Positions 524-51,011 of a DNA stretch of 64,000 nt are shown here, piece by piece. The position numbers and the translations under genes were made by a program. Position 1 is the first letter of the stretch. Each line of letters begins with the position of its first letter. The notes beneath the pieces were generated by a model, which made no database searches, had not been told where the DNA came from, and saw only the letters and a list, made by a program, of their open reading frames with translations. The stretch is from Mytilus californianus (Eukaryota): contig NW_026262615.1 of assembly GCF_021869535.1 (NCBI RefSeq), positions 11,718,001-11,782,000 on the forward strand, written 5' to 3'.

Positions 524-687
524 ATGTTGATGTCAGTTGCAGTTATGTTGTTTATAAGCCTGTTGAAAGGGGATTTAGTTAATGGATGTCCTTCATCTTG
601 TTCATGTACTGGTACACTAATTGATTGTTCCGGAAGGAGTTTTGATGAAATACCGTATACAGATATTTCTTCAACCACAACAATTTT
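524..687 (+). CDS. Exon 1: signal peptide + LRRNT (MLMSVAVMLFISLLKGDLVNGCPSSCSCTGTLIDCSGRSFDEIPYTDISSTTTIL)
   Basis: ATG at 524, hydrophobic N-terminus, CPxxCxCxxxxxxCxxxxxxxIP motif, phase-2 donor TT|GTAAGT at 688. Confidence 0.92.
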
Positions 688-9600: not shown

Positions 9601-12600
9601 AAGATGTGCATAATGTCAAATCATAAATATACCAATTGCTTAATCTCTTAACAAAACATTGTAAGACTTCCGCTACTATTTTTGCTAATTAGGTGCAATT
9701 TGGGTACTCAGTGCAATTTGAGTACCGCGACGTTACATGTATAAACATAAGCTAATATTTTCTATCTTCTATTAAGATCATATTTCAAAACTTTCAACCA
9801 TGAATATCTTTTTCCTATTTTAATTTTTCTCTAAAAACCACATTTTACCCAAGAATTACCATTTTTAAATACTAATAACTACATTTCTTCATAATATAAA
9901 CAGAATATATAATATGTCGTATTTTCTATAAAGATCCCACATCAAAAGTTTTAACAACAATAACCGAGCTTTTTTTTTCAGTTTTCGAGGTTTTTCTCTC
10001 TAAAAACATATATTTCAGCCAAATTTACCCAAATATTAATATAAATAACTATTGGACTTCACATAATAAGCATAAAATAGTATGTTCTGTCTTTGAAGAT
10101 CACATTTCACACATTTTAACCATTAACACCTGAGATTTTCATCATTTTCAGTTTTCAGCGTTTTTTCTCTAAATCACACATTTCACCTCAAAATTACTTT
10201 AATACGAATAATTATAAATAAAGGGCTACATAATACACTAAAAAAATAAAGTGTCCTATCTTCTTCACCAAGCTATAAGTCTCAAAATGTAACCATAAAT
10301 AACTGTTTTTAATTTTTTCCAGTTTTCCGTATTTTTGTTCTCTAAAAACCATATATTTCACACCAAAATAACCTTTTCCTCAAAATATGATAATGTAGAT
10401 TTTTATTATATGTTTTTAGTACAAGTCTATGTTCTAATTTACACTTAAACAAATCTTGTGTTGCAATTAATTGCAGGTTGAGTAATATTAGAGCTAAATT
10501 GACTAGGCTATCACTTTTTATGTCATCATTACACTTTTAGACTGACAGCAGCAATCGCGAGACACAAGGTTCCTCGGAACATCTTATGAATTTTTGAATT
10601 TACATTGGAGTATGGTAGTTTTAATGAGGCATGTTTTAAACATTCCCTTTTTCAGATGTTGGACGGGATTTCGTTTTGTTTTACAGTTGACATGTAGTCC
10701 AGTCCATTATTATGTCGATCAATCTTATTATGGTGTTCAATCAAATGATTTTAATGTCTAATAAATTATGAGTATAGATGACAAATATATTTGATCCACT
10801 GAATAACTGAAGATAGACCTTTGAAATATTTGGTAATATGAATATAAGTAGGTTAATTAAGTATATTAAACACATTCTGGTATCCAAAGAACTTCCTTTG
10901 TGCATACTAATCTTACTTTAAATGCCGCTCACATTTAAAGGTGGCAGTAAAGCTTAAACAATTGCATCAACAATGTCAGTTTAAAGAAAAATTTATTTAT
11001 CTATTGAACACATGGAGTTCAAAATAGGTAATCTTTGGTAAGTTCAGTATCAGTGTTTTAGTGTTAAATGATCTATAATCAAGATATTTGATTTCCTTCC
11101 AGAAATTTATCGGATAACAAGTTAATAACTTTACCAGATGGTCTGTTTTCTAACAACACTAAACTTAAAACATTGTAAGTATGATGTATGCTCATCTCAG
11201 ACTTTTTCTTACATATTATATTATTTAAATTGTATATCTAATCACGTAGACACACATCTGCTGTTCTTACATATACTTGTGTGCCGATAACTCAGTACTT
11301 TTGTCATCATTCTATTTTAATTTCGTTAAATAATGTTGAATTTTAGAGCAATGAAAATAACATCATCAATATCAGGTTGATCACAATTACATTTGATCCA
11401 TTGAACAACTGAAGTTCAACCTTTGAAATGTTTGGTAATTTGAATATAAGTAGAATAATTAAGTATATTCATAATCATTAATTTTCTATTAGATATTTAC
11501 TTAATAACAAGTTAAAAAAATTCCCAAAAGGTCAGTTAAGATTGAACTTGTTGAACACAAATCTTCAATATGTCAGACTTAAACTTATTAAAAGATTATA
11601 TTAAATTATTGCAAATCATGTTCCTATATAAAGGGGTTTTAATATACTTGTATGCCAATAGCTCAGCAGGTTTATCACAATGATAAACTTATTGAATACA
11701 GGGAGATCAAATTGGTAATCTTTGGTAAGTTTAGTATCAGTGTTTTGATTTAACATGTTCTTACACAATCAAGATATTTGATTTTCTTCCAGATTTTTAA
11801 GGCATAACAAGTTAGTAACTTTACCAGAAGATTTGTTTCTGTTCAACATGAATCCTATATAATTTTAAGTGTAATTGATATTTATATCAGACCTAAACTT
11901 ATTTAATAGTGTGTGGAATTTTTAACCTCGTTCATATGTTTTCTAACAACACACAAATTAAAACATTGTATGTATGAATTGTGATCATCTTAGGACTTAA
12001 TTGTGTTACAGATTATATTGTATATTTAATCACGTACAAATATCTGATTTTCTTCAAAATACTTGTGTGTTGAGAACTCAACAGTTTTGCCATCATTCTT
12101 TTTTAATTAAGTTCATTTTGTATGTTAAATTTTAAAGCAATACAAAGTATATCTATCATATCAGGTGGACGACAAATATATTTGATCGATTGAATAACTT
12201 ACGATCAACCTTTAAAATGTATGGTAATGTAAATAAAAGAAGATAAATTAAGCATTTTCATCATCATTGATTTTCTATTAATTATTTAATGAGTAACAAG
12301 TTAGAAAATTTACCAGAAGGTCGTTTAACATTGAACATGTTAAACACCAATCTTCAATATGCCAGACTTCCTTTTTATATGCTAATTTAACTTTTAATGT
12401 TATTCAATATTTCAAAATTAATCTTAGAATTCCTTTTGGTAATTTGAATATAATTGTCTTGATTGAATATGTTCTTACATAATGAAGATGCTTGATTATA
12501 CTCCAAAATTGTAACTAAAGACAACAAGGAAAGTTTACCAGATAGTCTGTTATCATCAAACACCAAGTTACAAGAATTGTAATTGTGAATAATGTTTATC

Positions 12601-15600
12601 ACAGACTTTAATTTATGAAAGATTGTGTTGTTTATATAATCACGTACATATATAACTGATATTCCTCAATATACTTGTCTGTTGACAACTCAGAAGGTCT
12701 AACTTAATTTCATTTTATTGGCAAACTTCCTTTGTGCATACTAAATGTTACTTTCAATGTCACTCATTGATTAAAGATTGCAGTTGAAGCTTATAAAAAT
12801 GCATCAACAATGTCAGTTTGAAGAAAAATATATTTCATCTTTTCAATACACGGAGATCGAATTTGGTAATCTCTGGTAAATTCGGTATCGGTGTTTTAAT
12901 TTAACATGTTCTTACAAAATCAAGATATTTGACTTCCTTTCAGACATTTATACGAAAACAAGTTAGTAACTTTACCTGAAGGTCTGTTTTCTAGCAACAC
13001 AAAACTTGAAACAATGTAAGTATGATTTATGTTCATCTCAGACTTTTTCTTACATATTATATTATTTAAATTGTATATCTAATCACGTACACATACATCT
13101 GCTGTTCTTACATATACTTGTGTGCCGATAACTCAGTAGTTTTGTCATCATTCTATTTTAATTTCGTTAAATAATGTTGATTTTTAAAGCAATGAAAATC
13201 ACATCAACAATATCAGGTTGATGACACATATATTTGATCCATTGAATAACTGAAGATCAACCTTTGAAATGTTTGGTAATTTGAATATAAGTAGGTTAAT
13301 TAAGTAACTATGTTCATGATCATCAATTTTCGATTAGATATTTACTGAATAACAAGTTAGAAAAAATCCCAGAAGGTCAGTTAACATTGCACATGTTGAA
13401 CACCAATCTTCAATATGTCAGACTTAATCTTATTAAAAGGTTATATTAAATTATTGCAAATCATGTTCCTATATAAAAGGGTTTTTAATATACTTGTGTG
13501 CCAATAGCTCAGCAGGTTTATCACAATTATAAACTTATTGAATACAAGGAGATCAGATTGGTAATCTTTTGTAAGTTCAGAATTAGTGCTTTAATGTAAC
13601 ATGTTCTTATATTACCATGATAATTGATTTTCTTCCAGAGATTTAGAGAATAACGCGTTGGTAACTTTACCAGAAGGTCTGTTTTCTAACAACACTAAAC
13701 TTGAAAGATTGTAAGTATGATTTATGCTCATCTCAGACTTTTTCTTACATATTATATTATTTAAATTGTATATCTTATCACGTAGACACACATCTGCTCT
13801 TCTTACATATACTTGTGTGCCGATAACTCAGTAGTTTTGTCATCATTCTATTTTAATTTCGTTAAATAATGTTGAATTTTAGAGCAATGAAAATTACATC
13901 ATCAATATCAGGTTGATCACAATTACATTTGATCCATCGAACAACTGAAGTTCAACCTTTGAAATGTTTGGTAATTTGAATATAAGTAGGTTAATTAAGT
14001 ATATTCATGATCATTGATTTTCTATTAGATATTTACTTAATAACAAGTTAAAAAAATTCCCAAAAGGTCAGTTAAGATTGAACTTGTTGAACACAAATCT
14101 TCAATATGTCAGACTTAAACTTATTAAAAGATTATATTAAATTATTGCAAATCATGTTCCTATATAAAGGGGTTTTAATATATACTTGTGTGCCAATAGC
14201 TCAGCAGGTTTATCACTATGATAAACTTATTGAATACAGGGAGATCAAATTGGTAATCTTTGGTAAGTTTAGTATCAGTGTTTTGATTTAACATGTTCTT
14301 ACACAATCAAGATATTTGTTTTTCTTCCAGATTTTTAAGGCATAACAAGTTAGTAACTTTACCAGAAGATGTGTTTCTGTTCAACATGAATCCTATAGAA
14401 TTTTAAGTGTAATTGATATTTATATCAGACCTAAACTTATTTAATAGTGTGTGGAATTTTTAACCTCGTTCATATGTTTTCTAACAAAACAAAAATTAAA
14501 ACATTGTATGTATGAATTGTGATCATCTTAGGACTTAATTGTGTTATAGATTATATTGTATATTTAATCACGTACACATATCTGATTTTCTTCAAAATAC
14601 TTGTGTGTTGAGAATTCAACAGTTTTGCCATCATTCTTTTTTAATTAAGTTCATTTTTTTATGTTGAATTTTAAAGCAATACAAATTTTATCTATCATAT
14701 CAGGTGGACGACAAATATATTTGATCGATTGAATAACTTACGATCAACCTTTAAAATTTATGGTAATGTAAATATAAGAAGATAAATTAAGCATTTTCAT
14801 GATCATTGATTTTCTATTAATTATTTAATGAGTAACAAGTTAGAAAGTTTACCAGAAGGTCATTTAACATTGAACATGTTGAACACCAATCTTCAATATG
14901 TCAGACTTCCTTTTTATATGCTAATTTAACTTTTAATGTTATTCAATATTTCAAAATTAATCTTAGAATTCCTTTTGGTAATTTGAATATAATTGTCTTG
15001 ATTGAATATGTTCTTACATAATTAAGATGCTTGATTATACTCCAAAATTGTAACCAAAGACAACAAGGAAAGTTTACCAGATAGTCTGTTATCATCAAAC
15101 ACCAAGTTACAAGAATTGTAATTGTGAATAATGTTTATCACAGACTTTATTTTATGAAAGATTGTGTTGTTTATATAATCACTTACATATATAACTGATA
15201 TTCCTCAATATACTTGTCTGTTGACAACATAGAAGGTCTAAATTAATTTCATTTTATTGGCAAACTTCCTTTGTGCATACTAAATGTTACTTTCAATGTC
15301 ACTCATTGATTAAAGATTGCAGTTGAAGCTTATAAAAATGCATCAACAATGTCAGTTTGAAGAAAAATATATTTCATCTTTTCAATACACGGAGATCGAA
15401 TTTGGTAATCTCTGGTAAATTCGGTATCGGTGTTTTAATTTAACATGTTCTTACAAAATCAAGATAGTTGACTTCCTTTCAGACATTTAGGCCAGAACAA
15501 GTTAATAACTTTACCAGAAGATCTTTTTTCTAGCAACACAAAACTTGAAACATTGTAAGTATGATTTATGTTCATCTCAGACTTTAAGTTACATATTATA

Positions 15601-18600
15601 TTATTTGAACTGTATATCTAATCACGTAGACACACATCTGCTGTTCTTACATATACTTGTGTGCCGAGAACTCAGTAGTTTTGTCATTATTCTTTTTTAA
15701 TTTCGTTAAATAATGTTGATTTTTAAAGCAATGAAAATCACATCAACAATATCAGGTTGATGACACATATATTTGATCCATTGAATAACTGAAGATCAAC
15801 CTTTGAAAAGTTTGGTAATTTGAATATAAGTAGGTTAATTAAGTAACTATGTTCATGATCATCAATTTTCGATTAGATATTTACTGAATAACAAGTTAGA
15901 AAAAATCCCAGAAGGTCAGTTAACATTGCACATGTTGAACACCAATCTTCAATATGTCAGACTTAATCTTATTAAAAGGTTATATTAAATTATTGCAAAT
16001 CATGTTCCTATATAAAAGGGTTTTTAATATACTTGTGTGCCAATAGCTCAGCAGGTTTATCACAATTATAAACTTATTGAATACAAGGAGATCAGATTGG
16101 TAATCTTTTGTAGGTTCAGAATTAGTGCTTTAATGTAACATGTTCTTATATTACCATGATAATTGATTGTCTTCCAGAGATTTAGGGAATAACGCGTTGG
16201 TAACTTTACCAGAAGGTCTGTTTTCTAACAACACTAAACTTGAAACATTGTAAGTATGATTTATGCTCATCTCAGACTTTTTCTTACATATTATATTATT
16301 TAAATTGTATATCTTATCACGTAGACACACATCTGCTCTTCTTACATATACTTGTGTGCCGATAACTCAGTAGTTTTGTCATCATTCTATTTTAATTTCG
16401 TTAAATAATGTTGAATTTTAGAGCAATGAAAATTACATCATCAATATCAGGTTGATCACAATTACATTTGATCCATCGAACAACTGAAGTTCAACCTTTG
16501 AAATGTTTGGTAATTTGAATATAAGTAGGTTAATTAAGTATATTCATGATCATTGATTTTCTATTAGATATTTACTTAATAACAAGTTAAAAAAATTCCC
16601 AAAAGGTCAGTTAAGATTGAACTTGTTGAACACAAATCTTCAATATGTCAGACTTAAACTTATTAAAAGATTATATTAAATTATTGCAAATCATGTTCCT
16701 ATATAAAGGGGTTTTAATATATACTTGTATGCCAATAGCTCAGCAGGTTTATCACAATGATAAACTTATTGAATACAGGGAGATCAAATTGGTAATCTTT
16801 GGTAAGTTTAGTATCAGTGTTTTGATTTAACATGTTCTTACACAATCAAGATATTTGATTTTCTTCCAGATTTTTAAGGCATAACAAGTTAGTAACTTTA
16901 CCAGAAGATTTGTTTCTGTTCAACATGAATCCTATAGAATTTTAAGTGTAATTGATATTTATATCAGACCTAAACTTATTTAATAGTGTGTGGAATTTTT
17001 AACCTCGTTCATATGTTTTCTAACAAAACAAAAATTAAAACATTGTATGTATGAATTGTGATCATCTTAGGACTTAATTGTGTTATAGATTATATTGTAT
17101 ATTTAATCACGTACACATATCTGATTTTCTTCAAAATACTTGTGTGTTGAGAACTCAACAGTTTTGCCATCATTCTTTTTTAATTAAGTTCATTTTTTTA
17201 TGTTGAATTTTAAAGCAATACAAATTTTATCTATCATATCAGGTGGACGACAAATATATTTGATCGATTGAATAACTTACGATCAACCTTTAAAATGTAT
17301 GGTAATGTAAATATAAGAAGATAAATTAAGCATTTTCATGATCATTGATTTTCTATTAATTATTTAATGAGTAACAAGTTAGAAAGTTTACCAGAAGGTC
17401 ATTTAACATTGAACATGTTGAACACCAATCTTCAATATGTCAGACTTCCTTTTTATATGCTAATTTAACTTTTAATGTTATTCAATATTTCAAAATTAAT
17501 CTTATAATTCCTTTTGGTAATTTGAATATAATTGTCTTGATTGAATATGTTCTTACATAATTAAGATGCTTGATTATACTCCAAAATTGTAACCAAAGAC
17601 AACAAGGAAAATTTTCCAGATAGTCTGTTATCATCAAACACCAAGTTACAAGAATTGTAATTGTGAATAATGTTTATCACAGACTTTATTTTATGAAAGA
17701 TTGTGTTGTTTATATAATCACTTACATACATAACTGATATTCCTCAATATACTTGTCTGTTGACAACTCAGAAGGTCTAACTTAATTTCATTTTATTGGC
17801 AAACTTCCTTTGTGCATACTAAATGTTACTTTCAATGTCACTCATTGATTAAAGATTGCAGTTGAAGCTTATAAAAATGCATCAACAATGTCAGTTTGAA
17901 GAAAAATATATTTCATCTTTTCAATACACTGAGATCGAATTTGGTAATCTCTGGTAAATTCGGTATCGGTGTTTTAATTTAACATGTTCTTACAAAATCA
18001 AGATAGTTGACTTCCTTTCAGACATTTAGAGCAGAACAAGTTAATAACTTTACCAGAAGATCTTTTTTCTAGCAACACAAAACTTGAAACATTGTAAGTA
18101 TGATTTATGTTCATCTCAGATTTTAAGTTACATATTATATTATTTGAACTGTATATCTAATCACGTACACTCACATCTGCTGTTCTTACATATACTTGTG
18201 TGCCGAGAACTCAGTAGTTTGTCATTATTCTATTTTAATTTCGTTAAATAATGTTGATTTTTAAAGCAATGAAAATCACATCAACAATATCAGGTTGATG
18301 ACACATATATTTGATCCATTGAATAACTGAAGATCAAACTTTGAAATGTTTGGTAATTTGAATATAAGTAGGTTAATTAAGTAACTATGTTCATGATCAT
18401 CAATTTTCGATTAGATATTTACTGAATAACAAGTTAGAAAAAATCCCAGAAGGTCAGTTAACATTGCACATGTTGAACACCAATCTTCAATATGTCAGAC
18501 TTAATCTTATTAAAAGGTTATATTAAATTATTGCAAATCATGTTCCTATATAAAAGGGTTTTTAATATACTTGTGTGCCAATAGCTCAGCAGGTTTATCA

Positions 18601-21600
18601 CAATTATAAACTTATTGAATACAAGGAGATCAGATTGGTAATCTTTTGTAAGTTCAGAATTAGTGCTTTAATGTAACATGTTCTTACAAAATCAAGATAG
18701 TTGACTTCCTTTCAGACATTTAGGCCAGAACAAGTTAATAACTTTACCAGAAGATCTTTTTTCTGTTCAACATGAATCCTATAGAATTTTAAGTGTAATT
18801 GATATTTATATCAGACCTAAACTTATTTAATAGTGTGTGGAATTCTTAACCTCGTTCATATGTTTTCTAACAAAACAAAAATTAAAACATTGTATGTATG
18901 AATTGTGATCATCTTAGGACTTAATTGTGTTATAGATTATATTGTATATTTAATCACGTACACATATCTGATTTTCTTCAAAATACTTGTGTGTTGAGAA
19001 CTCAGCAGTTTTGCTATCATTCTTTTTAAATTTGGTTCATTTTTTTATGTTGAATTTTAAAGCAATACAAATTATATATCTATCATATCAGGTGGACGAC
19101 AAATATATTTGATCGATTGAATAACTTAAGATCAACCTTTAAAATGTATGGTAATGTAAATAAAAGAAGATAAATTAAGCATTTTCATGATCATTGATTT
19201 TCTATTAATTATTTAATGAGTAACAAGTTAGAAAGTTTACCAGAAGGTCATTTAACATTGAACATGTTGAACACCAATCTTCAATATGTCAGACTTCCTT
19301 TGTATATGCTAATTTAACTTTTAATGTTATTCAATATTTCAAAATTAATCTTAGAATTCCTTTTGGTAATTTGAATATAATTGTCTTGATTGAATATGTT
19401 CTTACATAATTAAGATGCTTGATTATACTCCAAAATTGTAACCAAAGACAACAAGGAAAGTTTACCAGATAGTCTGTTATCATCAAACACCAAGTTACAA
19501 GAATTGTAATTGTGAATAATGTTTATCACAGACTTTATTTTATGAAAGATTGTGTTGTTTATATAATCACGTACATATATAACTGATATTCCTCAATATA
19601 CTTGTCTGTTGACAACTCAGAAGGTCTACCTTAATTTCATTTTATTGGCAAACTTCCTTTGTGCATACTTAATGTTAGTTTCAATGTCACTCATTGTTTA
19701 AAGATTCCAGTTGAAGCTTATAAAAATGCATCATCAATGTCAGTTTGAAGAAAAATATATTTCATCTTTTCAATACACGGAGATCGAATTTGGTAATCTC
19801 TGGTAAATTCGGTATCGGCGTTTTAATTTAACATGTTCTTACAAAATCAAGATATTTGACTTCCTTTCAGATATTTATACGTAAACAAGTTAGTAACTTT
19901 ACCTGAAGGTCTGTTTTCTAGCAACACAAAACTTGAAACATTGTAAGTATGATTTATGTTCATCTCAGACTTTAAGTTACATATTATATTATTTGAACTG
20001 TATATCTAATCACGTAGACACACATCTGCTGTTCTTACATATACTTGTGTGCCGAGAACTCAGTAGTTTTGTCATTATTCTTTTTTAATTTCGTTAAATA
20101 ATGTTGATTTTTAAAGCAATGAAAATCACATCAACAATATCAGGTTGATGACACATATATTTGATCCATTGAATAACTGAAGATCAACCTTTGAAATGTT
20201 TGGTAATTTGAATATAAGTAGGTTAATTAAGTATATTCATATTTATTGATTTTCTATTAGATATTTACTTAATAACAAGTTAAAAAAATTCCCAAAAGGT
20301 CAGTTAAGATTGAACTTGTTGAACACAAATCTTCAATATGTCAGACTTAAACTTATTAAAAGATTATATTAAATTATTGCAAATCATGTTCCTATATAAA
20401 GGGGTTTTAATATACTTGTATGCCAATAGCTCAGCAGGTTTATCACAATGATAAACTTATTGAATACAGGGAGATCAAATTGGTAATCTTTGGTAAGTTT
20501 AGTATCAGTGTTTTGATTTAACATGTTCCTACACAATCAAGATATTTGATTTTCTTCCAGATTTTTAAGGCATAACAAGTTAGTAACTTTACCAGAAGAT
20601 TTGTTTCTGTTCAACATGAATCCTATAGAATTTTAAGTGTAATTGATATTTATATCAGACCTAAACTTATTTAATAGTGTGTGGAATTTTTAACCTCGTT
20701 CATATGTTTTCTAACAACACACAAACTAAAACATTGTATGTATGAATTTTGATCATCTTAGGACTTAATTGTGTTATAGATTATATTGTATATTTAATCA
20801 CGTACACATATCTGATTTTCTTCAAAATACTTGTGTGTTGAGAACTCAACAGTTTTGCCATGATTCTTTTTTAATTAAGTTCATTTTGTATGTTGAATTT
20901 TAAAGCAATACAAATTATATCTATCATATCAGGTGGACGACAAATATATTTGATCGATTGAATAACTTACGATCAACCTTTAAAATGTATGGTAATGTAA
21001 ATAAAAGAAGATAAATTAAGCATTTTCATGATCATTGATTTTCTATTAATTATTTAATGAGTAACAAGTTAGAAAATTTACCAGAAGGTCGTTTAACATT
21101 GAACATGTTAAACACGAATCTTCAATATGCCAGACTTCCTTTTTATATGCTAATTTAACTTTTAATGTTATTCCATATTTCAAAATTAATCTTAGAATTC
21201 CTTTTGATAATTTGAATATAATTGTCTTGATTGAATATGTTCTTACATAATTAAGATGCTTGATTATACTCCAAAATTGTAACCAAAGACAACAAGGAAA
21301 GTTTACCAGATAGTCTGTTATCATCAAACACCAAGTTACAAGAATTGTAATTGTGAATAATGTTTATCACAGACTTTATTTTATGAAAGATTGTGTTGTT
21401 TATATAATCACGTACATATATAACTGATATTCCTCAATATACTTGTCTGTTGACAACTCAGAAGGTCTAACTTAATTTCATTTTATTGACAAACTTCCTT
21501 TGTGCATACTAAATGTTACTTTCAATGTCACTCATTGATTAAAGATTGCAGTTGAAGCTTATAAAAATGCATCAACAATGTCAGTTTGAAGAAAAATGTA

Positions 21601-24600
21601 TTTCATCTTTTCAATACACTGAGATCGAATTTGGTAATCTCTGGTAAATTCGGTATCGGTGTTTTAATTTAACATGTTCTTACAAAATCAAGATAGTTGA
21701 CTTCCTTTCAGACATTTAGACCAGAACAAGTTAATAACTTTACCAGAAGATCTTTTTTCTAGCAACACAAAACTTGAAACATTGTAAGTATGATTTATGT
21801 TCATCTCAGACTTTAAGTTACATATTATATTATTTGAACTGTATATCTAATCACGTACACTCACATCTGCTGTTCTTACATATACTTGTGTGCCTAGAAC
21901 TCAGTAGTTTGTCATTATTCTATTTTAATTTCGTTAAATAATGTTGATTTTTAAAGCAATGAAAATCACATCAACAATATCAGGTTGATGACACATATAT
22001 TTGATCCATTGAATAACTGAAGATCAACCTTTGAAATGTTTGGTAATTTGAATATAAGTAGGTTAATTAAGTAACTATGTTCATGATCATCAATTTTCGA
22101 TTAGATATTTACTGAATAACAAGTTAGAAAAAATCCCAGAAGGTCAGTTAACATTGCACATGTTGAACACCAATCTTCAATATGTCAGACTTAATCTTAT
22201 TAAAAGGTTATATTAAATTATTGCAAATCATGTTCCTATATAAAAGGGTTTTTAATATACTTGTGTGCCAATAGCTCAGCAGGTTTATCACAATTATAAA
22301 CTTATTGAATACAAGGAGATCAGATTGGTAATCTTTTGTAAGTTCAGAATTAGTGCTTTAATGTAACATGTTCTTATATTACCATGATAATTGATTTTCT
22401 TCCAGAGATTTAGAGAATAACGCGTTGGTAACTTTACCAGAAGGTCTGTTTTCTAACAACACTAAACTTGAAAGATTGTAAGTATGATTTATGCTCATCT
22501 CAGACTTTTTCTTACATATTATATTATTTAAATTGTATATCTTATCACGTAGACACACATCTGCTCTTCTTACATATACTTGTGTGCCGATAACTCAGTA
22601 GTTTTGTCATCATTCTATTTTAATTTCGTTAAATAATGTTGAATTTTAGAGCAATGAAAATTACATCATCAATATCAGGTTGATCACAATTACATTTAAT
22701 CCATCGAACAACTGAAGTTCAACCTTTGAAATGTTTGGTAATTTGAATATAAGTAGGTTAATTAAGTATATTCATGATCATTGATTTTCTATTAGATATT
22801 TACTTAATAACAAGTTAAAAAAATTCCCAAAAGGTCAGTTAAGATTGAACTTGTTGAACACAAATCTTCAATATGTCAGACTTAAACTTATTAAAAGATT
22901 ATATCAAATTATTGCAAATCATGTTCCTATATAAAGGGGTTTTAATATATACTTGTGTGCCAATAGCTCAGCAGGTTTATCACTATGATAAACTTATTGA
23001 ATACAGGGAGATCAAATTGGTAATCTTTGGTAAGTTTAGTATCAGTGTTTTGATTTAACATGTTCTTACACAATCAAGATATTTGATTTTCTTCCAGATT
23101 TCTAAGGCATAACAAGTTAGTAACTTTACCAGAAGATGTGTTTCTGTTCAACATGAATCCTATAGAATTTTAAGTGTAATTGATATTTATATCAGACCTA
23201 AACTTATTTAATAGTGTGTGGAATTTTTAACCTCGTTCATATGTTTTCTAACAAAACAAAAATTAAAACATTGTATGTATGAATTGTGATCATCTTAGGA
23301 CTTAATTGTGTTATAGATTATATTGTATATTTAATCACGTACACATATCTGATTTTCTTCAAAATACTTGTGTGTTGAGAACTCAACAGTTTTGCCATCA
23401 TTCTTTTTTAATTAAGTTCATTTTTTTATGTTGAATTTTAAAGCAATACAAATTTTATCTATCATATCAGGTGGACGACAAATATATTTGATCGATTGAA
23501 TAACTTACGATCAACCTTTAAAATGTATGGTAATGTAAATATAAGAAGATAAATTAAGCATTTTCATGATCATTGATTTTCTATTAATTATTTAATGAGT
23601 AACAAGTTAGAAAGTTTACCAGAAGGTCATTTAACATTGAACATGTTGAACACCAATCTTCAATATGTCAGACTTCCTTTTTATATGCTAATTTAACTTT
23701 TAATGTTATTCAATATTTCAAAATTAATCTTAGAATTCCTTTTGGTAATTTGAATATAATTGTCTTGATTGAATATGTTCTTACATAATTAAGATGCTTG
23801 ATTATACTCCAAAATTGTAACCAAAGACAACAAGGAAAGTTTACCAGATAGTCTGTTATCATCAAACACCAAGTTACAAGAATTGTAATTGTGAATAATG
23901 TTTATCACAGACTTTATTTTATGAAAGATTGTGTTGTTTATATAATCACTTACATATATAACTGATATTCCTCAATATATTTGTCTGTTGACAACTCAGA
24001 AGGTCTAACTTAATTTCATTTTATTGGCAAACTTCCTTTGTGCATACTAAATGTTACTTTCAATGTCACTCATTGATTAAAGATTGCAGTTGAAGCTTAT
24101 AAAAATGCATCAACAATGTCAGTTTGAAGAAAAATATATTTCATCTTTTCAATACACTGAGATCGAATTTGGTAATCTCTAGTAAATTCGGTATCGGTGT
24201 TTTAATTTTACATGTTCTTACAAAATCAAGATAGTTGATTTCCTTTCAGATTTTTAGGCCAGAACAAGTTAATAACTTTACCAGAAGGTCTTTTTTCTAG
24301 CAACACAAAACTTGAAAGATTGTAAGTATGATTTATGCTCATCTCAGACTTTTTCATACATATTATATTATTTAAATTGTATATCTAATCACGTACACAT
24401 ACATCTGCTGTTCTTACATATACTTGTGTGCCGAGAACTCAGTAGTTTTGTCATCATTCTATTTTAATTTCGTTAAATAATGTTGATTTTTAAAGCAATG
24501 AAAAGCACATCAACAATATCAGGTTGATGACACATATATTTGATCCATTGAATAACTGAAGATCAACCTTTGAAATGTTTGGTAATTTGAATATAAGTAG

Positions 24601-27600
24601 GTTAATTAAGTAACTATGTTCATGATCATCAATTTTCTATTAGATTTTTACTGAATAACAAGTTCCAAAACTTCCCAGAAGGTTAGTTAACATTGATCAT
24701 GTTGAACACAAATCTTCAATATGTCAGACTTAATCTTATTAAAAGGTTATATTAAATTATTGCAAATCATGTTCCTATCCTATATAAAGGGGTTTTAATA
24801 TACTTGTGTGCCAATAGCTCAGCAGGTTTATCACAATTATAAACTTATTGAATACAAGGAGATCAAATTGGTATTCTTTGGTAAGTTTAGTATCAGTGTT
24901 TTGATTTAACATGTTCCTACACAATCAAGATATTTGATTTTCTTCCAGATTTTTAAGGCATAACAAGTTAGTAACTTTACCAGAAGATTTGTTTCTGTTC
25001 AACATGAATCCTATATAATTTTAAGTGTAATTGATATTTATATCAGACCTAAACTTATTTAATAGTGTGTGGAATTCTTAACCTCGTTCATATGTTTTCT
25101 AACAAAACAAAAATTAAAACATTGTATGTATGAATTGTGATCATCTTAGGACTTAATTGTGTTATAGATTATATTGTATATTTAATCACGTACACATATC
25201 TGATTTTCTTCAAAATACTTGTGTGTTGAGAACTCAGCAGTTTTGCTATCATTCTTTTTAAATTTGGTTCATTTTTTTATGTTGAATTTTTAAGCAATAC
25301 AAATTATATATCTATCATATCAGGTGGACGACAAATATATTTGATCGATTGAATAACTTAAGATCAACCTTTAAAATGTATGGTAATGTAAATAAAAGAA
25401 GATAAATTAAGCATTTTCATGATCATTGATTTTCTATTAATTATTTAATGAGTAACAAGTTAGAAAGTTTACCAGAAGGTCATTTAACATTGAACATGTT
25501 GAACACCAATCTTCAATATGTCAGACTTCCTTTGTATATGCTAATTTAACTTTTAATGTTATTCAATATTTCAAAATTAATCTTAGAATTCCTTTTGGTA
25601 ATTTGAATATAATTGTCTTGATTGAATATGTTCTTACATAATTAAGATGCTTGATTATACTCCAAAATTGTAACCAAAGACAACAAGGAAAGTTTACCAG
25701 ATAGTCTGTTATCATCAAACACCAAGTTACAAGAATTGTAATTGTGAATAATGTTTATCACAGACTTTATTTTATGAAAGATTGTGTTGTTTATATAATC
25801 ACGTACATATATAACTGATATTCCTCAATATACTTGTCTGTTGACAACTCAGAAGGTCTACCTTAATTTCATTTTATTGGCAAACTTCCTTTGTGCATAC
25901 TTAATGTTAGTTTCAATGTCACTCATTGTTTAAAGATTCCAGTTGAAGCTTATAAAAATGCATCATCAATGTCAGTTTGAAGAAAAATATATTTCATCTT
26001 TTCAATACACGGAGATCGAATTTGGTAATCTCTGGTAAATTCGGTATCGGTGTTTTAATTTAACATGTTCTTACAAAATCAAGATATTTGACTTCCTTTC
26101 AGATATTTATACTTTAACAAGTTAGTAACTTTACCTGAAGGTCTGTTTTCTAGCAACACAAAACTTGAAACATTGTAAGTATAATTTATGCTTATCTCAG
26201 ACTTTAAGTTACATATTATATTATTTGAACTGTATATCTAATCACGTACACACACATCTGCTGTTCTTACATATACTTGTGTGCCGAGAACTCAGTAGTT
26301 TTGTCATTATTCTATTTTAAATTTCGTTAAATAATGTTGATTTTTAAAGCAATGAAAATCACATCAACAATATCAGGTTGAAGACACATATATATGATCC
26401 ATTGAATAACTGAAGATCAACCTTTGAAATGTTTGGTAATTTGAATATAAGTAGGTTAATTAAGTAACTATGTTCATGATCATCAATTTTCTATTAGATA
26501 TTTACTGATTAACAAGTTAGAAAACATCCCAGAAGGTTAGTTAACATTGAACATGTTGAACACCAATCTTCAATATGTCAGACTTCCTTTTTATATGCTA
26601 ATTTAACTTTTAATGTTATTCAATATTTTAAAATTAATCTTAGAATTCCTTTTGGTAATTTGAATATAATTGCCTTGATTGAATATGTTCTTACATAATT
26701 AAGATGCTTGATTATACTCCAAAATTGTAACTAAAGACAACAAGGAAAGTTTACCAGATAGTCTGTTATCATCAAACACTAAGTTACAAGAATTGTAATG
26801 GTGAATAATGTTTATCACAGACTTTATTTTATGAAAGATTGTGTTGTTTATATAATCACGTACATATATAACTGATATTCCTCAATATACTTGTCTGTTG
26901 ACAACTCAGAAGGTCTACCTTAATTTCATTTTATTGGCAAACTTCCTTTGTGCATACTTAATGTTAGTTTCAATGTCACTCATTGTTTAAAGATTCCAGT
27001 TGAAGCTTATAAAAATGCATCATCAATGTCAGTTTGAAGAAAAATATATTTCATCTTTTCAATACACGGAGATCGAATTTGGTAATCTCTGGTAAATTCG
27101 GAATCGGTGTTTTAATTTAACATGTTCTTACAAAATCAAGATATTTGACTTCCTTTCAGATATTTATACGTAAACAAGTTAGTAACTTTACCTGAAGGTC
27201 TGTTTTCTAGCAACACAAAACTTGAAACATTGTAAGTATGATTTATGTTCATCTCAGACTTTAAGTTACATATTATATTATTTGAACTGTATATCTAATC
27301 ACGTACACACACATCTGCTGTTCTTACATATACTTGTGTGCCGAGAACTCAGTAGTTTTGTCATTATTCTTTTTTAATTTCGTTAAATAATGTTGATTTT
27401 TAAAGCAATGAAAATCACATCAACAATATCAGGTTGATGACACATATATTTGATCCATTGAATAACTGAAGATCAACCTTTGAAATGTTTGGTAATTTGA
27501 ATATAAGTAGGTTAATTAAGTAACTATGTTCATGATCATCAATTTTCTATTAGATATTTACTGAATAACAAGTTAGAAAACTTCCCAGAAGATCAGTTAA

Positions 27601-30600
27601 CATTGATCATGTTGAACACAAATCTTCAATATGTCAGACTTAAGGAGGCTCGAGGGTATAAAATTTAAATTACAGTTTTTCCTTATAATTTGTTGATTGA
27701 AACCTCTTAACATATGAATTAAAAAATGCAAAAAAAATAGGGGGTCACCGACCATCTAAGCAAGTTACAGACTGCTAAAAAAATAGGTTTTCCCCTCATA
27801 AATCGTACAATTTTTACAAAGACTAATAGGGAAAATTGCACCTGCGTTGCCTTCATCTTAACCTACTGAGAGAAGAAAATTACAGATTTCTATTATACTT
27901 TTCATTCTAAGAGAGTTGGTAGTGAAGTTCAGAAAAAGCAAAAAAAAAGTGGGGGTCACCGACCTTTTAAGAGAGTGTGAAACCATGGCAACCAAAAAAG
28001 GTAATTTCTGAAAAAAAATCAACTTTTTCTCCAGTATTTTGGCCTTAACTATATGAAATGAAAATCTGTTTATGGTTAACAGTACCCCTAAGTGATATGC
28101 AGGCCAACATTGAATTTTAGGTCATTTTGATAAATTCGTAAGGTCATAGGTTAAGGTTATGGTGTTCATGAACATGATAAATTTGTTATTTTTGAAAGTT
28201 TTGATGAAATTTTTATGAGATCATTCGCTAAGTTAAATCAAAATTACAGATTTATATTATACTTTCCATTCTAAGAGAGTTGGTAGTGAAGTTCAGAAAA
28301 AGCAAAAAAAAAAAGTGGGGGTCACCGACCTTTTAAGAGAGGTAGACCACCAAAAGTGTGAAACCATGGCAACCAAAAAAGGTTATTTTTGAAAAAAAAT
28401 CAACCTTTTCTCCAGTATTTTGGCCTAAACTATATGAAATGAAAATCTGTATACGGTAAACAGTACCCCTAAGTGATGTGCAGGCCAACATTGAATTTTA
28501 GGTCATTTGGTAAATTCGTAAGGTGAAAGGTTAAGGTCATGGTGTTCATGAAAATGATAAATTTATGCTATTTTTGAAAGTTTTGATGAAATTTTTATGA
28601 GATCATTCGCTAAGTTAAATCAAAATTTACATATTATTAACTGTCATACATAATGAAACAAAATGTAAAACAAAAATTTAAGTGGAAGGCGAACCTGAAT
28701 GATGAGGGTCTGGAAAGGGGGTCCTTCAACCTTCTGTTCTTTAAATCTTTATGTCATTATTCTCTATTCCTAAATTTTAGCACTCCTTTATATTCTATTT
28801 TTTTTTGGCGATTTTCTCTATTCTTTATATGTTTTGGCCTTAATTTAAATTGCACTTTTTATCCATTATTCTCTATGCTGTAGACCCCATCCAGATACTC
28901 AATGATTGTCGAATTCAGTTATCAAAGTCACTATTGTTAGAATAGTCAGACTTATATTGTAGGGAACATTCTAGATGATTTTGAAGGAAAAGTACCAAGA
29001 TTATATAGATTATAACGCACTGGGAAAAATATTCCTTTATAGATCTAACACTGGCGGATCCAGAAATTTTCATAAGTGTGGCCCACTGACTGCCTATATA
29101 ATCAACCAAATTTTTCCCAAAAAAGGGGGGATCTGGGGCCCCTGCCCCCCTTAAATCCGCCTCTGTCTAATGCCTATAGGGCATATTATGTAACAAAATG
29201 AACTAGTCAACTAGATAATTAGATACCTAAAAAATGATTCCTCCACTTGTCCTCCAAGTTTGACATTGGAAACCTCGAACATCATTATAGTTCCATCAAA
29301 AAATAAAATAGGTGCATAATGTATTTTGAATTATGTTTCCTTGAAGACTTCCGGACTTATATGTCACATTTGGTTGTTTCCTATTAAAGAGTTAATGGTT
29401 TAGATTAAGATGTAGTCTGTGTCTGTCCCACGTCAGGAGCCTGTAGTTCAGTATTTGTGGTTTGTTGCTGTATGTATCTTTCATTTTCATTTATTGTTCT
29501 GTACATAAACTAGGCCTCTGATGATATAAGAATGGATGGTCAAGGGTTAATCTATTTCATATCCCATCCACATTTGTGGTGGGGCATAACAAAATATAAT
29601 CTTTGTTTCTACATAAAATACAAATAACAACTTGCAGTATAGGTGATATAAGTATTTATTTATGGACATATTTATGGTCCCATACATTAACTGATCCATA
29701 TAACATTAAATCCAAAATCAATTAACCAATGAAATTGTTTAAACGCATGGTTTGATTTGTGGCACTTATTTCATTCATATAACAAGACATTTCACTGTGC
29801 AATAGGGAGTGTAATTATCCTGTTCTGCCAGGCATTTTATGCAAATACCACCTTTTTTTTTTACATTTCCTTCAGAATACTAATTCTTATATTGAAAGAT
29901 AAATTAAAGATTTAATTTATCCCTTAAAATACAACTAGGCAAAAGGTAAGATACTTCATTTGCCAAAGAAACATAATTGGATACAATTAGACTGTACCAG
30001 TAATGAGTGATATCATTTTGCAATGCATCTGGTAAAGATTATTTTTCTCATTGACAAAAATACTACAAGAAATACAACTTTAAATATCTCCCATTGGGTT
30101 TCTATCAATAAGCTTTTAACTTCACTGATGGCCATTTTGAATTTCTACAACAGTCCAAACACTTGTTTAGGACCTTGAATTAAATATATATCTACTTTTT
30201 TTCAATTCAATCTATAATGCTGTTATCATTGAAATGTGTACTGAACTGACCCTTTAAGCTCCTTCCTAGAACCAAAGCTAGTAGCTCGAACTGATCATCT
30301 TACAAAGTTTGTCACTTAATATTATTTGTAGTTAAAATATAAAGCAACATGTAAATTGACATTTAATCTTTGCTGGCTCTTATTTTTATTGTCAATAAGA
30401 TAACACCACTTGTTCAATACCTTGATCGGAAAATAAATAAATGTACTATGTTTTGTTTCAATCCCTACAGGATTTCTTGAGAATAAGGTTTCAATCAAGA
30501 TTAACCAATGACAATTTACATTCAGACAGGATGGCTATCTATCTTTACCAATTGTCACCTAATCTTCAACAATTAAAAAGGACATTAATTGATAGAAATA

Positions 30601-49487: not shown

Positions 49488-49685
49488 AAACAAAGTGGAT
49501 CGATTTCATTCTTATATAAAACTGAGGGACAATTCTAACATGGTTTGAATTTTATCATCATCATTGTAGGTAAAGTCATTCTTTGCTTTCGTTTGAAATT
49601 TTAACTTTCGATATCTTAGATACAATCTGTGTGGTTTACTTTCTCTCGAGTGCAAACTTACTTAGTCTTACTTGTATGTTGTAAT

Positions 49686-50433
49686 CTTGAATTCAGATAT
49701 TAGGTTAGATGAGTTTTATTGGACCACCTATTATAGCATTGCATCTGTTTATTAATAATATGTATGACATGAAATTTGTAAAAGTGTGTGAGAATAAACG
49801 TTTTGTTATATCGTTTGAGGGTGTTTTGTGGGATATACATTAGCTACATGTTACATTTTTTTGGTGATATTTTGTGGGAATATTCATTGGTATTTTCAAC
49901 TTGTATTTGAATAATTGATATATGTGATTTTTTTCTCAATAAATGCGGGTATAAATTTAATAGTACATGTTTTCATCTTTTTTTTTTCCATATAAATATC
50001 AAATGATCAAGGCAAATGATTCATAATACCATATACATATAATTCACAACCAGGAGGTAAACTTGAATTCAGTTATTAGGTTAGATGAGTTTTATTGGAC
50101 CACCTATTATAGCATTGCATCTGTTTATTAATAATATGTATGACATTAAATTTGTAAAAGTGTGTGAGAATAAACGTTTTGTTATATCGTTTGATGATAT
50201 TTTGTGGGATATACAATAGCTACATGTTACATGTTTTTGGAAATATTTTGTGGGAATATTCATTGGTATTTTCAACTTGTATTTGAATAATTGATATATG
50301 TGATTTTTTTCTCAATAAATGCGGGTATAAATTTAATAGTACATGTTTTCATTTTTTTTTGCCATATAAATATCGAATGATCAAGGCAAATGATTCATCA
50401 TACCAAATACATATAATTCACAACCAGGAGGTA
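49686..50433 (+). repeat. Two-copy 376-bp tandem duplication
   Basis: ggaccacctattatagcattgcatctg at 49721 and 50097; both copies end cacaaccaggaggta. Confidence 0.9.
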
Positions 50434-51011
50434 TACTTATTTTCAACTTTCAGTAACTCCAAGTTACTGATGGGTGTAGTTGATGGTAAAATGAGACCCA
50501 AGTGAACCAAAACTATACACTTTATCTGAATAGATCAGAGCTATTCAGTCGTGCATTCAGAAGGGGATTCAAACTCTACGAATAAAATGAGCACATGGGT
50601 TTTTAATCCTTTCAAAAAATCCATTGTGCATGCTGTATCCTCTCTTCACGCCAAATGTGTTGATGTTACAGCCAACACAGTCATTTACTGTTGTTTTTAT
50701 ATGGTAACATCATTATTTTGAGTGTATAATAGAGGCAAAAGATACCAAAAGGATAGCCGAACACATAAGTCGGAAAACAAAGTGACAATGCCATTGCAAA
50801 AAGCAAAAAAAGGATGGATAAGCAGGTAATCATCCACATGTTGCTCTCGTCTAACTAATGTATGCAATATCATCATTCACGAAGGGGAATATTTCATTAA
50901 ATGAAAAACGTGACCTTCTCTCCTTTAGTATTAACATTAAAAGGACTATAAAAAGCTCAGTCCAAATATTTGGTAAAAAACTTCCAAAAAACCTTTAAAA
51001 ACTGCATATGG

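What the first reader, a model, noticed from the sequence alone, without database searches (positions are those of the whole stretch)
11103..27231. VLR-like LRR cassette array with substitutions focused on the ligand-binding face
Seen: twelve 72-nt exons each encode one 24-aa LRR, and their flanking introns are almost identical between copies. Exon differences among close copies are nonsynonymous and fall at the x positions of LxxLxLxxNxL. Exons 15483, 18022 and 21712 differ only at x7 (GGC/GAG/GAC = G/E/D). Exons 19871 and 26103 differ only at x8 (GTA/TTT = V/F). D-type exons 13639 and 16178 differ only at x7 (E/G) and x3 (R/T). Across copies x5 is N/H/D/Y/F and x8 is D/E/N/Q/V/F, while the LPE(G/D)LFS convex side is nearly fixed. 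Known: these positions form the concave antigen-binding surface of lamprey VLRs, which share the SP-LRRNT-LRRV-LRRCT layout. Inference: a bivalve recognition protein diversified by exon-unit duplication plus positive selection, convergent on VLR logic. I do not know of this locus being described.
Basis: partly seen in the sequence, partly recalled or inferred. Interest (0 to 1): 0.85.

Follow-up and report, generated by a model that had tools for sequence, protein, structure and literature searches.

The report
Mussel LRR-TSP1 gene, fast-evolving exon array
A mussel (Mytilus) gene for a secreted binding protein has recently multiplied its one-repeat exons, and the intact copies differ almost only at the residues that would touch a ligand. 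It is an ordinary spliced gene, not a lamprey-style assembled receptor, and I found no evidence that it is expressed.

Summary

They belong to one + strand gene. Spliced, it reads 470 codons without a stop:
- signal peptide and LRRNT (524-687);
- one LRR (1530-1601);
- the 12 cassettes;
- an LRRCT-like exon (44147-44298);
- a TSP1 exon (45277-45435).

The array runs 10777-27643 and 41588-43825, split by a 14-kb TTAA transposon. It also holds 31 dead LRR exon copies.

Within each exon type, codons x3/x5/x7/x8 carry 11 changes on 36 sites. Flanking introns run at 3.1% and the rest of the exon at 1.1% (P=3e-8). At least 12.5 of the 13 changes alter the protein. Dead copies in the same repeat units are almost invariant at these codons, which argues against a mutation hotspot. 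Short gene-conversion tracts and one intra-exon recombinant also shuffle variants.

The family is found only in Mytilus in these searches and carries only automatic names. The mechanism is germline duplication plus diversifying selection. Brown-alga LRR-ROCO genes are the closest precedent, not VLR.

One RNA run gave no reads, which the tool itself calls no test.

This scan already followed up a paralogous array about 5 Mb away (s1-340015).

The parts
524..687 (+). Exon 1 coding part: start codon, signal peptide and LRRNT (CPSSCSC...IDC). It ends with 2 nt of a split Leu codon.
   Evidence: Sequence read. Pfam LRRNT, 27.2 bits against a cut-off of 25.8. The N-terminus resembles P0002 of M. edulis.
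1530..1601 (+). First LRR exon (NLRRNNLTTLRTNALSGLTSLII), 72 nt, phase 1
   Evidence: It corresponds to the first LRR of paralogues.
10777..27643 (+). Main part of the exon-plus-intron tandem array. It contains three 2539-bp super-units (12944, 15483, 21712; 98.5-98.7% identical) and several units of about 1845 bp.
11103..11174 (+). Intact cassette 1 (N-type: NLSDNKLITLPDGLFSNNTKLKT)
12944..13015 (+). Intact cassette 2 (Y-type core, HLYE). It sits in a conversion tract of about 200 bp within super-unit 1.
13639..13710 (+). Intact cassette 3 (D-type, DLEN), identical to the exon at 22406
15483..15554 (+). Intact cassette 4 (H-type, HLGQ)
16178..16249 (+). Intact cassette 5 (D-type, DLGN)
18022..18093 (+). 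Intact cassette 6 (H-type, HLEQ)
18716..18787 (+). Dead hybrid exon: the 5' 48 nt are identical to H-type exon 15483, the 3' part is of the psiF type, and there is no GT donor. It is the footprint of a crossover inside an exon.
19871..19942 (+). Intact cassette 7 (Y-type, YLYV), identical to the exon at 27160
21712..21783 (+). Intact cassette 8 (H-type, HLDQ)
22406..22477 (+). Intact cassette 9 (D-type, DLEN)
24250..24321 (+). Intact cassette 10 (FLGQ). Its x5 codon TTT and the T at -11 are shared with the dead psiF copies.
26103..26174 (+). Intact cassette 11 (Y-type, YLYF)
27160..27231 (+). Intact cassette 12 (Y-type, YLYV)
11793..11864 (+). First of 7 psiF dead exons (also 14331, 16870, 20561, 23098, 24949, 41807). 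The acceptor is kept, the donor has changed from GT to TT, and the 3' half has decayed.
12282..12353 (+). First of 9 Z dead exons (also 14821, 17360, 19209, 21050, 23588, 25441, 42296, 43413). The acceptor has changed from AG to AA.
11493..11571 (+). First of 12 X relics (also 13338, 14029, 15877, 16568, 18415, 20261, 22105, 22796, 24644, 26498, 27554). Each runs 79 nt to a weak GTCAGA, so inclusion would shift the frame. Two carry stop codons.
27644..41587 (.). 13,944-bp TTAA-flanked transposon inserted in one array unit. The TTAA target duplication lies at 27640-27643 and 41588-41591. Array sequence resumes seamlessly after it.
41588..43825 (+). Tail of the array. It holds only dead copies: 41807, 42296, the truncated exon 42952, 43413, and 43771, which has an in-frame stop.
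44147..44298 (+). LRRCT-like exon (DMRRNQFICC...TGCIIP, four Cys), phase 1 to phase 1
   Evidence: It has no Pfam hit. It is 67-71% identical to the equivalent part of Mytilus LRR-TSP1 proteins.
45277..45435 (+). Thrombospondin type 1 repeat exon
   Evidence: Pfam TSP_1, 5e-12. The frame stays open across all 16 exons.
46451..46539 (+). Tentative last coding exon (ENEQIIYISCQHESADN...stop)
   Evidence: It resembles the C-terminus of P0002. The acceptor is inferred and there is no RNA support.

Best explanation
This is a germline-complete, conventionally spliced gene of a secreted LRR-TSP1 family found only in Mytilus in these searches. The layout is SP, LRRNT, 13 LRRs, LRRCT, TSP1. Each LRR is one 72-nt phase-1 exon, so exons can be gained, lost or skipped without breaking the frame.

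The LRR domain expanded recently by unequal crossing-over of exon-plus-intron units. Most older copies decayed into intron sequence. Short-tract gene conversion and crossovers inside exons move variants between units.

Diversifying selection has driven repeated amino-acid replacement at the solvent-exposed positions x3, x5, x7 and x8 of LxxLxLxxNxL, while the scaffold residues are conserved. The product is most likely an extracellular binding or recognition protein with a concave face made of different repeats.

Shown here: the anatomy, the duplication history, and the excess of protein-changing substitutions at the x positions relative to introns and to dead copies.

Inferred: selection as the cause, the binding function, any immune role, and expression.
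For: 1. Twelve intact exons have canonical splice sites. All 16 exons join in one frame, giving 470 codons and no stop.
2. The repeat structure is clear. Three 2539-bp super-units are 98.5-98.7% identical, further units are 93-97% identical, and there are 43 LRR-coding segments of which 31 are dead.
3. Among 7 A-type units the exon has 14/72 variable sites, against 59/1110 upstream and 22/286 downstream (p=1e-4). No intron window of 72 nt reaches the exon's count. Codons x5/x7/x8 vary at 8/9 nucleotides. The rest of the exon varies at 6/63, which is intron level.
4. Within exon types there are 13 minimal steps. Eleven fall in x3/x5/x7/x8 (36 sites; expected 1.1 at the intron rate; P=3e-8). The rest of the exon has 2 steps on 180 sites (1.1%), against 3.1% in introns. 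At least 12.5 of the 13 steps change the protein.
5. Over all 12 exons there are 18 nonsynonymous steps on 9.8 sites at the hypervariable codons, against 4 synonymous steps on 15 sites. The ratio is 6.9 (p=6e-5). For the other codons the ratio is 0.6.
6. Internal control: the psiF (7 copies) and Z (9 copies) dead exons in the same units have 0/9 variable nucleotides at the homologous codons.
7. Several codon states occur in no other array segment, so they are not conversions from within the array: GAC, GGG and TCG at x7, and GTA, TTT, GAA and GAT at x8.
8. Conversion and recombination are visible directly. Nineteen of the 38 differences between super-units 1 and 2 lie in the first 212 bp. Exon 18716 is a hybrid.
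9. The family exists in several species. Thirteen clusters match the LRRCT exon. Named homologues with the same architecture come from M. edulis, M. coruscus, M. californianus, M. trossulus and M. galloprovincialis. An M. edulis paralogue locus, L001, has the same 72-nt exons and dead relics.
10. In a model of paralogue P0002 (LRR part pLDDT >90) the DSSP strands fall every 24 residues on x3-L4-x5.
Against: - No expression evidence. RNA run X21 laid 0 reads on 11001-17000, and the tool itself calls this no test.
- No annotated protein at least 90% identical to the spliced model was returned. The best match is 78%.
- A 14-kb transposon sits in the intron before the LRRCT exon, and several dead exons keep good acceptors. 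Both could disturb splicing.
- Part of the exon-versus-intron contrast reflects mosaic ancestry. The tract around exon 12944 also has 7% divergence over 140 nt of intron.
- Some 'steps' may be conversion or recombination products rather than new mutations. Examples are x5 CAT in 12944, x5 TTT in 24250 and x7 GAG in 18022.
- The numbers are small: 72-nt exons and about 15 synonymous sites.
- No likelihood codon model was run.
- The array order was not checked with long reads.
Confidence: 0.65

Rival explanations
1. Neutral mosaic. The exon types are simply older lineages. Gene conversion and unequal crossing-over homogenised the introns and, by chance, left the exons and their near flanks unconverted. 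There is no selection on the x positions.
For: The units are clearly mosaics. The differences between super-units 1 and 2 cluster in a tract of about 200 bp that includes 140 nt of intron at 7% divergence. Diversity stays raised for about 150 nt downstream of the exon.
Against: Inside the exon the excess is confined to three or four codons, while the Leu codon between them (TTA) never varies. Within-type changes are at least 12.5/13 protein-changing, and 11/13 fall in x3/x5/x7/x8. Dead copies in the same units are monomorphic at those codons. A peak of divergence centred on selected sites is what selection acting against homogenisation predicts.
Confidence: 0.12
2. Decaying or silent gene. The array is an unexpressed, recently amplified pseudogene and the variation is relaxed constraint.
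For: Zero RNA reads. A 14-kb transposon lies in the gene. There are 31 dead exons, and the tail of the array holds only dead copies. No matching annotated protein was found.
Against: All 12 exons keep their frame and both splice sites, whereas every relic class has lost one of these. Non-hypervariable exon sites change less than introns, 1.1% against 3.1%. Relaxed constraint cannot raise the x positions ten-fold above the intron rate.
Confidence: 0.1
3. Assembly artefact. The copy number or order of near-identical units was mis-assembled, or two haplotypes were concatenated.
For: The units are 93-98.7% identical. No long reads were available. One contig of X5 shows a joint that skips 2547 bp (11053 to 13601).
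Against: The copies differ in structured ways: the hybrid exon, units of about 1057, 1845 and 2539 bp, and one transposon with a clean TTAA duplication. Differences confined to codons are not an error pattern. Contigs from independent studies and sister species hold pieces of the array at 95-100% identity.
Confidence: 0.05
4. VLR-like somatic assembly. Cassettes are copied somatically into an incomplete gene.
For: The protein has a capped LRR layout, there are many unused cassettes nearby, and variation lies on the concave face.
Against: The germline reading frame is complete by ordinary splicing. All 43 segments lie on the + strand inside the gene's own introns. The intact ones have AG/GT and the unused ones are degenerate. 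There is no stalk or GPI region; the C-terminus is a TSP1 domain.
Confidence: 0.02

Closest known systems
Ectocarpus (brown alga) LRR-ROCO genes, 'highly dynamic exon shuffling' (Zambounis et al. 2012, PMC3341825)
   Same: Each LRR is one 72-nt (24-aa) exon. Introns hold inactivated LRR exon copies. Exons have been duplicated and shuffled recently. Positively selected sites lie on the concave face. The authors drew the same analogy to VLR.
   Different: The Ectocarpus proteins are intracellular ROC-COR GTPases of a brown alga, and some of their relics lie on the opposite strand. Here the protein is a secreted animal LRRNT-LRR-LRRCT-TSP1 protein, all relics are co-oriented, and the array is a regular higher-order tandem repeat.
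Mytilus LRR-TSP1 proteins with automatic names only (e.g. CAG2235010.1 M. edulis 'LRRNT domain-containing protein'; XP_071141731.1 'platelet glycoprotein V-like'; M. californianus 'carboxypeptidase N subunit 2-like', P0016)
   Same: The same SP-LRRNT-LRR(n)-LRRCT(CC motif)-TSP1 architecture, at 50-78% identity to the spliced model. The M. edulis paralogue locus has the same 72-nt phase-1 exons with dead relics.
   Different: These proteins have 3-9 motif-matching LRRs, against 13 here, mostly without the very recent amplification. Some members carry 2-5 TSP1 repeats or a transmembrane tail. No protein from this exact locus was found.
Lamprey and hagfish variable lymphocyte receptors
   Same: A capped LRR fold. 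The model of paralogue P0002 matches hagfish VLR A29 at target-normalised TM-score 0.83 and rmsd 1.7 Å. Variability is concentrated on concave-face positions.
   Different: VLR genes are incomplete in the germline and are finished by somatic copying from flanking cassettes. Here the gene is complete and spliced, diversity is germline and evolutionary, and the C-terminus is TSP1. Nogo receptor, GPIb-alpha and LRRTM2 match the fold equally well.
Plant LRR resistance proteins (Cf-9/Cf-4, NLR LRR domains): hypervariable solvent-exposed xxLxLxx residues. This comparison rests on my own knowledge and was not checked in a paper here.
   Same: Diversifying selection on the x positions of the beta-strand motif, change in repeat number by unequal crossing-over, and sequence exchange between repeats.
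   Different: In plants the variation is mostly between paralogous genes or alleles within large exons. It is not between one-repeat exons in a single gene with intron-borne relics.

Membership tests
VLR (jawless-vertebrate variable lymphocyte receptor) system | Capped ectodomain: SP, LRRNT, LRRs, LRRCT | tested here: met
   Pfam LRRNT on exon 1. The LRRCT-like exon has four Cys and is homologous to the family's LRRCT. The paralogue model matches VLR, Nogo receptor and GPIb-alpha folds.
VLR (jawless-vertebrate variable lymphocyte receptor) system | Germline gene is incomplete, with a non-coding spacer in place of the diversity region, and is completed by somatic cassette copying | tested here: not met
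   Sixteen exons with canonical AG/GT sites join into 470 codons without a stop.
VLR (jawless-vertebrate variable lymphocyte receptor) system | Donor cassettes lie outside the gene, in both orientations, without splice signals | tested here: not met
   All 43 LRR segments are on the + strand inside the gene's introns. Unused ones are degenerate exons. The minus-strand scan found none.
VLR (jawless-vertebrate variable lymphocyte receptor) system | C-terminal stalk with GPI or transmembrane anchor, and AID/APOBEC-like deaminase dependence | not testable with these tools
   The C-terminus here is a TSP1 repeat. Deaminase involvement cannot be assessed from one window.
Mytilus secreted LRR-TSP1 family (unnamed) | SP-LRRNT-LRR(n)-LRRCT with an N.F/L-I-CC-L motif, followed directly by a TSP1 repeat | tested here: met
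   blastp of the spliced model gives 78% identity to P0016, 62% to P0014 and 60% to P0002 across LRR, LRRCT and TSP1.
Mytilus secreted LRR-TSP1 family (unnamed) | One LRR per 72-nt phase-1 exon, with decayed copies in the introns | tested here: met
   The window and the M. edulis paralogue locus L001, with 6 intact and 5 dead segments.
Ectocarpus-type LRR exon-shuffling receptors (LRR-ROCO) | Single 72-nt LRR exons, inactivated intronic LRR copies, positive selection on the concave face | tested here: met
   compared with the description in PMC3341825.
Ectocarpus-type LRR exon-shuffling receptors (LRR-ROCO) | ROC-COR GTPase signalling module; intracellular protein | tested here: not met
   The protein has a signal peptide, LRRNT and TSP1. 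Pfam found no ROC or COR on the four window segments scanned (exon 1, LRRCT exon, TSP1 exon) or on the five homologues scanned.
Toll-like receptors | Transmembrane helix and cytoplasmic TIR domain after the LRR ectodomain | tested here: not met
   The LRRCT is followed by TSP1 and a short tail. The closest homologues end after TSP1 without a TIR domain.
Cassette-exon alternative splicing systems (Dscam-like diversification) | Symmetric exons, with transcripts that use different subsets of them | tested here: inconclusive
   All cassettes are phase 1 to phase 1. Two RefSeq isoform pairs in paralogues differ by exactly one 24-aa LRR. There are no RNA reads for this locus.

The most novel reading that the evidence does not exclude
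The Mytilus LRR-TSP1 genes could be a germline 'cassette library' recognition system. Exon arrays would turn over fast enough by unequal crossing-over, and by short-tract conversion that sometimes uses dead cassettes as donors, for individuals to carry different repeat sets. Skipping of the symmetric 72-nt exons would add combinations at the RNA level. This would be an animal counterpart of the brown-alga exon-shuffling receptors, working as an individualised secreted pattern-recognition repertoire.
Probability: 0.12. Interest if true: 0.8.

Novelty: new variant of a known kind. Interest (0 to 1): 0.5.

Why it matters
Mussels tolerate infection well, and their known immune diversity lies mostly in effector peptides and in gene presence/absence variation. 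A secreted LRR-TSP1 family restricted to mussels would be a new candidate class of diversified recognition molecules in a protostome. Its ligand-facing residues change about ten times faster than neighbouring introns, and its repeat number changes through exon arrays.

It would also be an animal example of the exon-per-repeat 'shuffling' architecture so far described in brown algae. The dead exon copies in the same units act as a built-in neutral control, which makes the selection signal unusually clean for such short sequences.

The limits are real. Function and expression are unknown. The general principle, hypervariable concave LRR faces with repeat duplication, is long established.

Tried and rejected
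- Tandem Repeats Finder saw nothing. Its longest period is 500, and the units here are about 1.8-2.5 kb. The repeat finder and blastn resolved the array.
- I considered the 79-nt X relics as a second class of real exons. I rejected this because the distance to the only nearby GT (GTCAGA) would shift the frame, and two copies carry stops.
- I considered a mutational hotspot or sequencing error at the x codons. I rejected this because 16 dead copies (psiF and Z) in the same units show 0/9 variable nucleotides there.
- I considered conversion from other array segments as the only source of variants. I rejected this because seven codon states are unique in the array.
- RNA support: read laying on 11001-17000 gave 0 reads from the one true RNA run. 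X15 and X20, labelled 'RNA?', hold more of the sampled words than the exons alone can supply, so they probably contain DNA or unspliced sequence (my own estimate).
- The look-up of encoding contigs for the closest homologue P0016 returned no DNA because the annotated gene range is 178 kb.
- I did not fold or database-search the window's own spliced protein. It has no contiguous reference and I did not type long sequences. A paralogue (P0002, with a family alignment) was folded instead.
- Three literature searches for a description of this mussel family found none.
- No 'ESC.HSKK' basic tail exon like that of most paralogues was found in 45437-52000.

Full report
**1. What is there**

A scan for AG + 72 nt + GT with an open phase-1 frame and an LRR motif finds exactly twelve such exons in the flagged interval. 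They start at 11103, 12944, 13639, 15483, 16178, 18022, 19871, 21712, 22406, 24250, 26103 and 27160. All have a ...cag| acceptor and a |gtaagt donor. A further exon of this kind lies at 1530-1601.

Each exon contributes 1 nt, then 23 codons, then 2 nt. The split codon is the Leu at motif position 4 (TT+A or TT+G; Ile where exon 12944 ends in AT). One exon therefore gives x5-L6-x7-x8-N9-...-L1-x2-x3 of LxxLxLxxNxL.

**2. The gene**

- Upstream, 524-687 encodes a start codon, a signal peptide and an LRRNT (Pfam 27.2 bits).
- Downstream of the array, 44147-44298 is an LRRCT-like exon with four Cys.
- 45277-45435 is a thrombospondin type 1 repeat (Pfam 5e-12).

All junctions are phase 1. Joining the 16 exons gives 470 codons with no stop. 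A last short exon at 46451-46539 is tentative.

A 13,944-bp element with a TTAA target duplication (27640-27643 and 41588-41591) interrupts one array unit.

**3. The array**

The array spans 10777-27643 and 41588-43825. Three 2539-bp super-units start at 12944, 15483 and 21712 and are 98.5-98.7% identical. Each has an A-type exon, a D-type exon and relics. Other units are about 1845 bp, and one spacing is 1057 bp.

A fuzzy search for the LRR core finds 43 LRR-coding segments, all on the + strand:

| Class | Copies | State |
|---|---|---|
| Intact | 12 | Open frame, AG and GT kept |
| psiF | 7 | Donor GT changed to TT, 3' half decayed |
| Z | 9 | Acceptor AG changed to AA |
| X | 12 | 79 nt to a weak GTCAGA, would shift the frame; two carry stops |
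| Hybrid (18716) | 1 | H-type 5' half joined to a psiF 3' half, no donor |
| Truncated (42952) | 1 | 3' end lost |
| Last (43771) | 1 | In-frame stop |

The introns are therefore largely made of decayed exon units. The Z and X relics resemble the 'LESLPEGLLTFNTNLQYL' repeat type, which is still functional in paralogues P0005 and P0015.

**4. Exon against intron**

Among A-type units, flanking introns are mostly 1-5% divergent (downstream up to about 12% for 26103 and 27160). Exons differ by up to 12.5-14%.

For seven A-type units:
- The exon has 14/72 variable sites.
- The upstream intron has 59/1110 and the downstream intron 22/286 (Fisher p=1e-4).
- None of 1273 intron windows of 72 nt reaches the exon's count.
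- The excess is entirely in codons x5, x7 and x8, where 8 of 9 nucleotides vary. The L6 codon TTA between them never varies.
- The remaining 63 nt vary at 9.5%, which is intron level.

Mosaicism complicates this. Nineteen of the 38 differences between super-units 1 and 2 lie in the first 212 bp, and that tract includes 140 nt of intron at 7% divergence. Exon 12944 therefore sits in a conversion tract.

I then restricted the analysis to comparisons within exon types (H, Y and D):
- There are 13 minimal steps in 216 exon sites, against 55 in 1766 flanking intron sites.
- Eleven of the 13 fall in x3/x5/x7/x8. That is 36 sites, with 1.1 steps expected at the intron rate (P=3e-8).
- The rest of the exon has 2 steps in 180 sites (1.1%), below the intron rate of 3.1%.
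- At least 12.5 of the 13 steps change the protein.

Over all 12 exons, minimal-step counts give 18 nonsynonymous steps on 9.8 sites at the hypervariable codons. This compares with 4 synonymous steps on 15 sites, a ratio of 6.9 (p=6e-5). The other codons give a ratio of 0.6. Pairwise Nei-Gojobori pN/pS is 0.81 overall, 2.0 at the hypervariable codons and 0.40 elsewhere.

**5. Internal control**

Dead copies travel in the same duplicated units. At the homologous x5/x7/x8 codons, psiF (7 copies) and Z (9 copies) show 0/9 variable nucleotides. They show 3-4/63 elsewhere. The two recent X subtypes are invariant.

The twelve intact exons carry 5, 6 and 6 codon states at x5, x7 and x8. Several of these occur in no other array segment: GAC, GGG and TCG at x7, and GTA, TTT, GAA and GAT at x8.

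This argues against a mutational hotspot, against sequencing error, and against within-array conversion as the only source of variants.

Some states probably did arise by conversion or by a crossover inside an exon:
- x5 CAT in 12944.
- x5 TTT with a T at -11 in 24250, shared with psiF.
- The hybrid exon at 18716 shows that such crossovers do occur.

**6. Family and fold**

The LRRCT exon finds 13 clusters among 1.84 billion representative proteins. The eleven homologues whose source names I saw are all from Mytilus.

A search with the full-length paralogue P0002 finds LRR-TSP1 proteins only in M. edulis, M. coruscus, M. californianus, M. trossulus and M. galloprovincialis. They carry automatic names such as 'platelet glycoprotein V-like', 'protein slit-like' and 'carboxypeptidase N subunit 2-like'. 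The next hits are generic LRR proteins.

The spliced model is 78% identical to P0016 and about 60% identical to P0002 and P0014. No product of this exact locus was returned.

The M. edulis paralogue locus L001 has the same 72-nt phase-1 exons and dead relics.

Two RefSeq isoform pairs differ by exactly one 24-residue repeat cut at the exon boundaries: P0019/P0020 and P0021/P0023. Single-cassette skipping is therefore annotated in this family.

By sequence and by predicted fold, the ectodomain belongs to the general capped extracellular LRR class. SHOC2, ALS, LRRC15, VLR-A and LGR4/5 match by sequence. LRRTM2, Nogo receptor, VLR and GPIb-alpha match by fold.

In the P0002 model (LRR part pLDDT >90) the strands recur every 24 residues on x3-L4-x5. 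This places x3 and x5 on the concave sheet, with x7 and x8 just after the strand. That last placement follows from general knowledge of LRR structure.

**7. Other DNA and RNA**

Array words occur in runs of nine studies and five organism labels, with shares up to 0.45. Contigs from an independent study and from sister taxa cover pieces of the array at 95-100% identity.

The differences seen inside exon 12944 in those runs are 12945 C>T (x5, H to Y), 13012 C>G (x3, T to R) and 13014 A>T. All three change the protein. Cross-mapping of paralogous copies cannot be excluded.

The only true RNA run gave 0 reads on 11001-17000. The tool rates that as no test.

**8. Reading**

This is an ordinary, germline-complete, spliced gene. 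It grows and shrinks by unequal crossing-over of exon units. It shuffles variants by short conversion tracts. It shows a strong signature of diversifying selection at ligand-facing positions.

It is not VLR-like in mechanism. The nearest described analogue is Ectocarpus LRR-ROCO: one 72-nt exon per LRR, inactivated intronic LRRs, and positive selection on the concave face (PMC3341825).

This scan had already followed up a paralogous LRR-TSP1 exon array about 5 Mb upstream in the same genome and reached the same reading (s1-340015). My tests here are independent of that note and were done on different DNA.

Noticed in passing
window 27644-41587: A 13,944-bp element flanked by a TTAA duplication (27640-27643 and 41588-41591) is inserted in a single array unit. 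It is therefore younger than that unit's duplication. Inside it, an ORF at 40656-40937 contains a tandem peptide repeat (GGQVLSFDNGLSQ.MVYR).
   Followed up: partly
window 18716-18787: A hybrid dead exon. Its first 48 nt are identical to exon 15483, its 3' part is psiF-type with a 1-nt shift, and it has no GT donor but keeps a perfect acceptor. It marks an unequal crossover inside an exon and could act as a splicing decoy.
   Followed up: partly
P0019/P0020 (M. californianus) and P0021/P0023 (M. galloprovincialis LOC143064089): Annotated isoform pairs differ by exactly one 24-residue LRR cut at the exon boundaries. Single-cassette skipping is thus annotated in this family. P0021-P0023 also carry a transmembrane tail after the TSP1 repeat.
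   Followed up: partly
P0005 (M. edulis XP_071141731.1): Another family member contains three identical copies, and one copy differing by a single residue, of NLRGNKLESLPEGLLTFNTNLEYL. Recent exon amplification is therefore not unique to this locus.
   Followed up: no
window 11001-17000 in run X5: The word depth of the array contigs is 500-2000 in one DNA run, and a contig shows a joint that skips 2547 bp (11053 to 13601). This hints at copy-number variants or at further copies of these units elsewhere in the genome.
   Followed up: no
window 12945, 13012, 13014: In contigs from other individuals or sister species, exon 12944 reads T, G and T at these places (x5 H to Y, x3 T to R, and the split codon). 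These may be allelic differences at the same hypervariable codons, or cross-mapped paralogous copies.
   Followed up: no
window 45436-45566: If the TSP1 exon is not spliced at 45435, the frame stays open to a TAA at 45564-45566, next to an AATAAA-like run. This could be an alternative 3' end.
   Followed up: no
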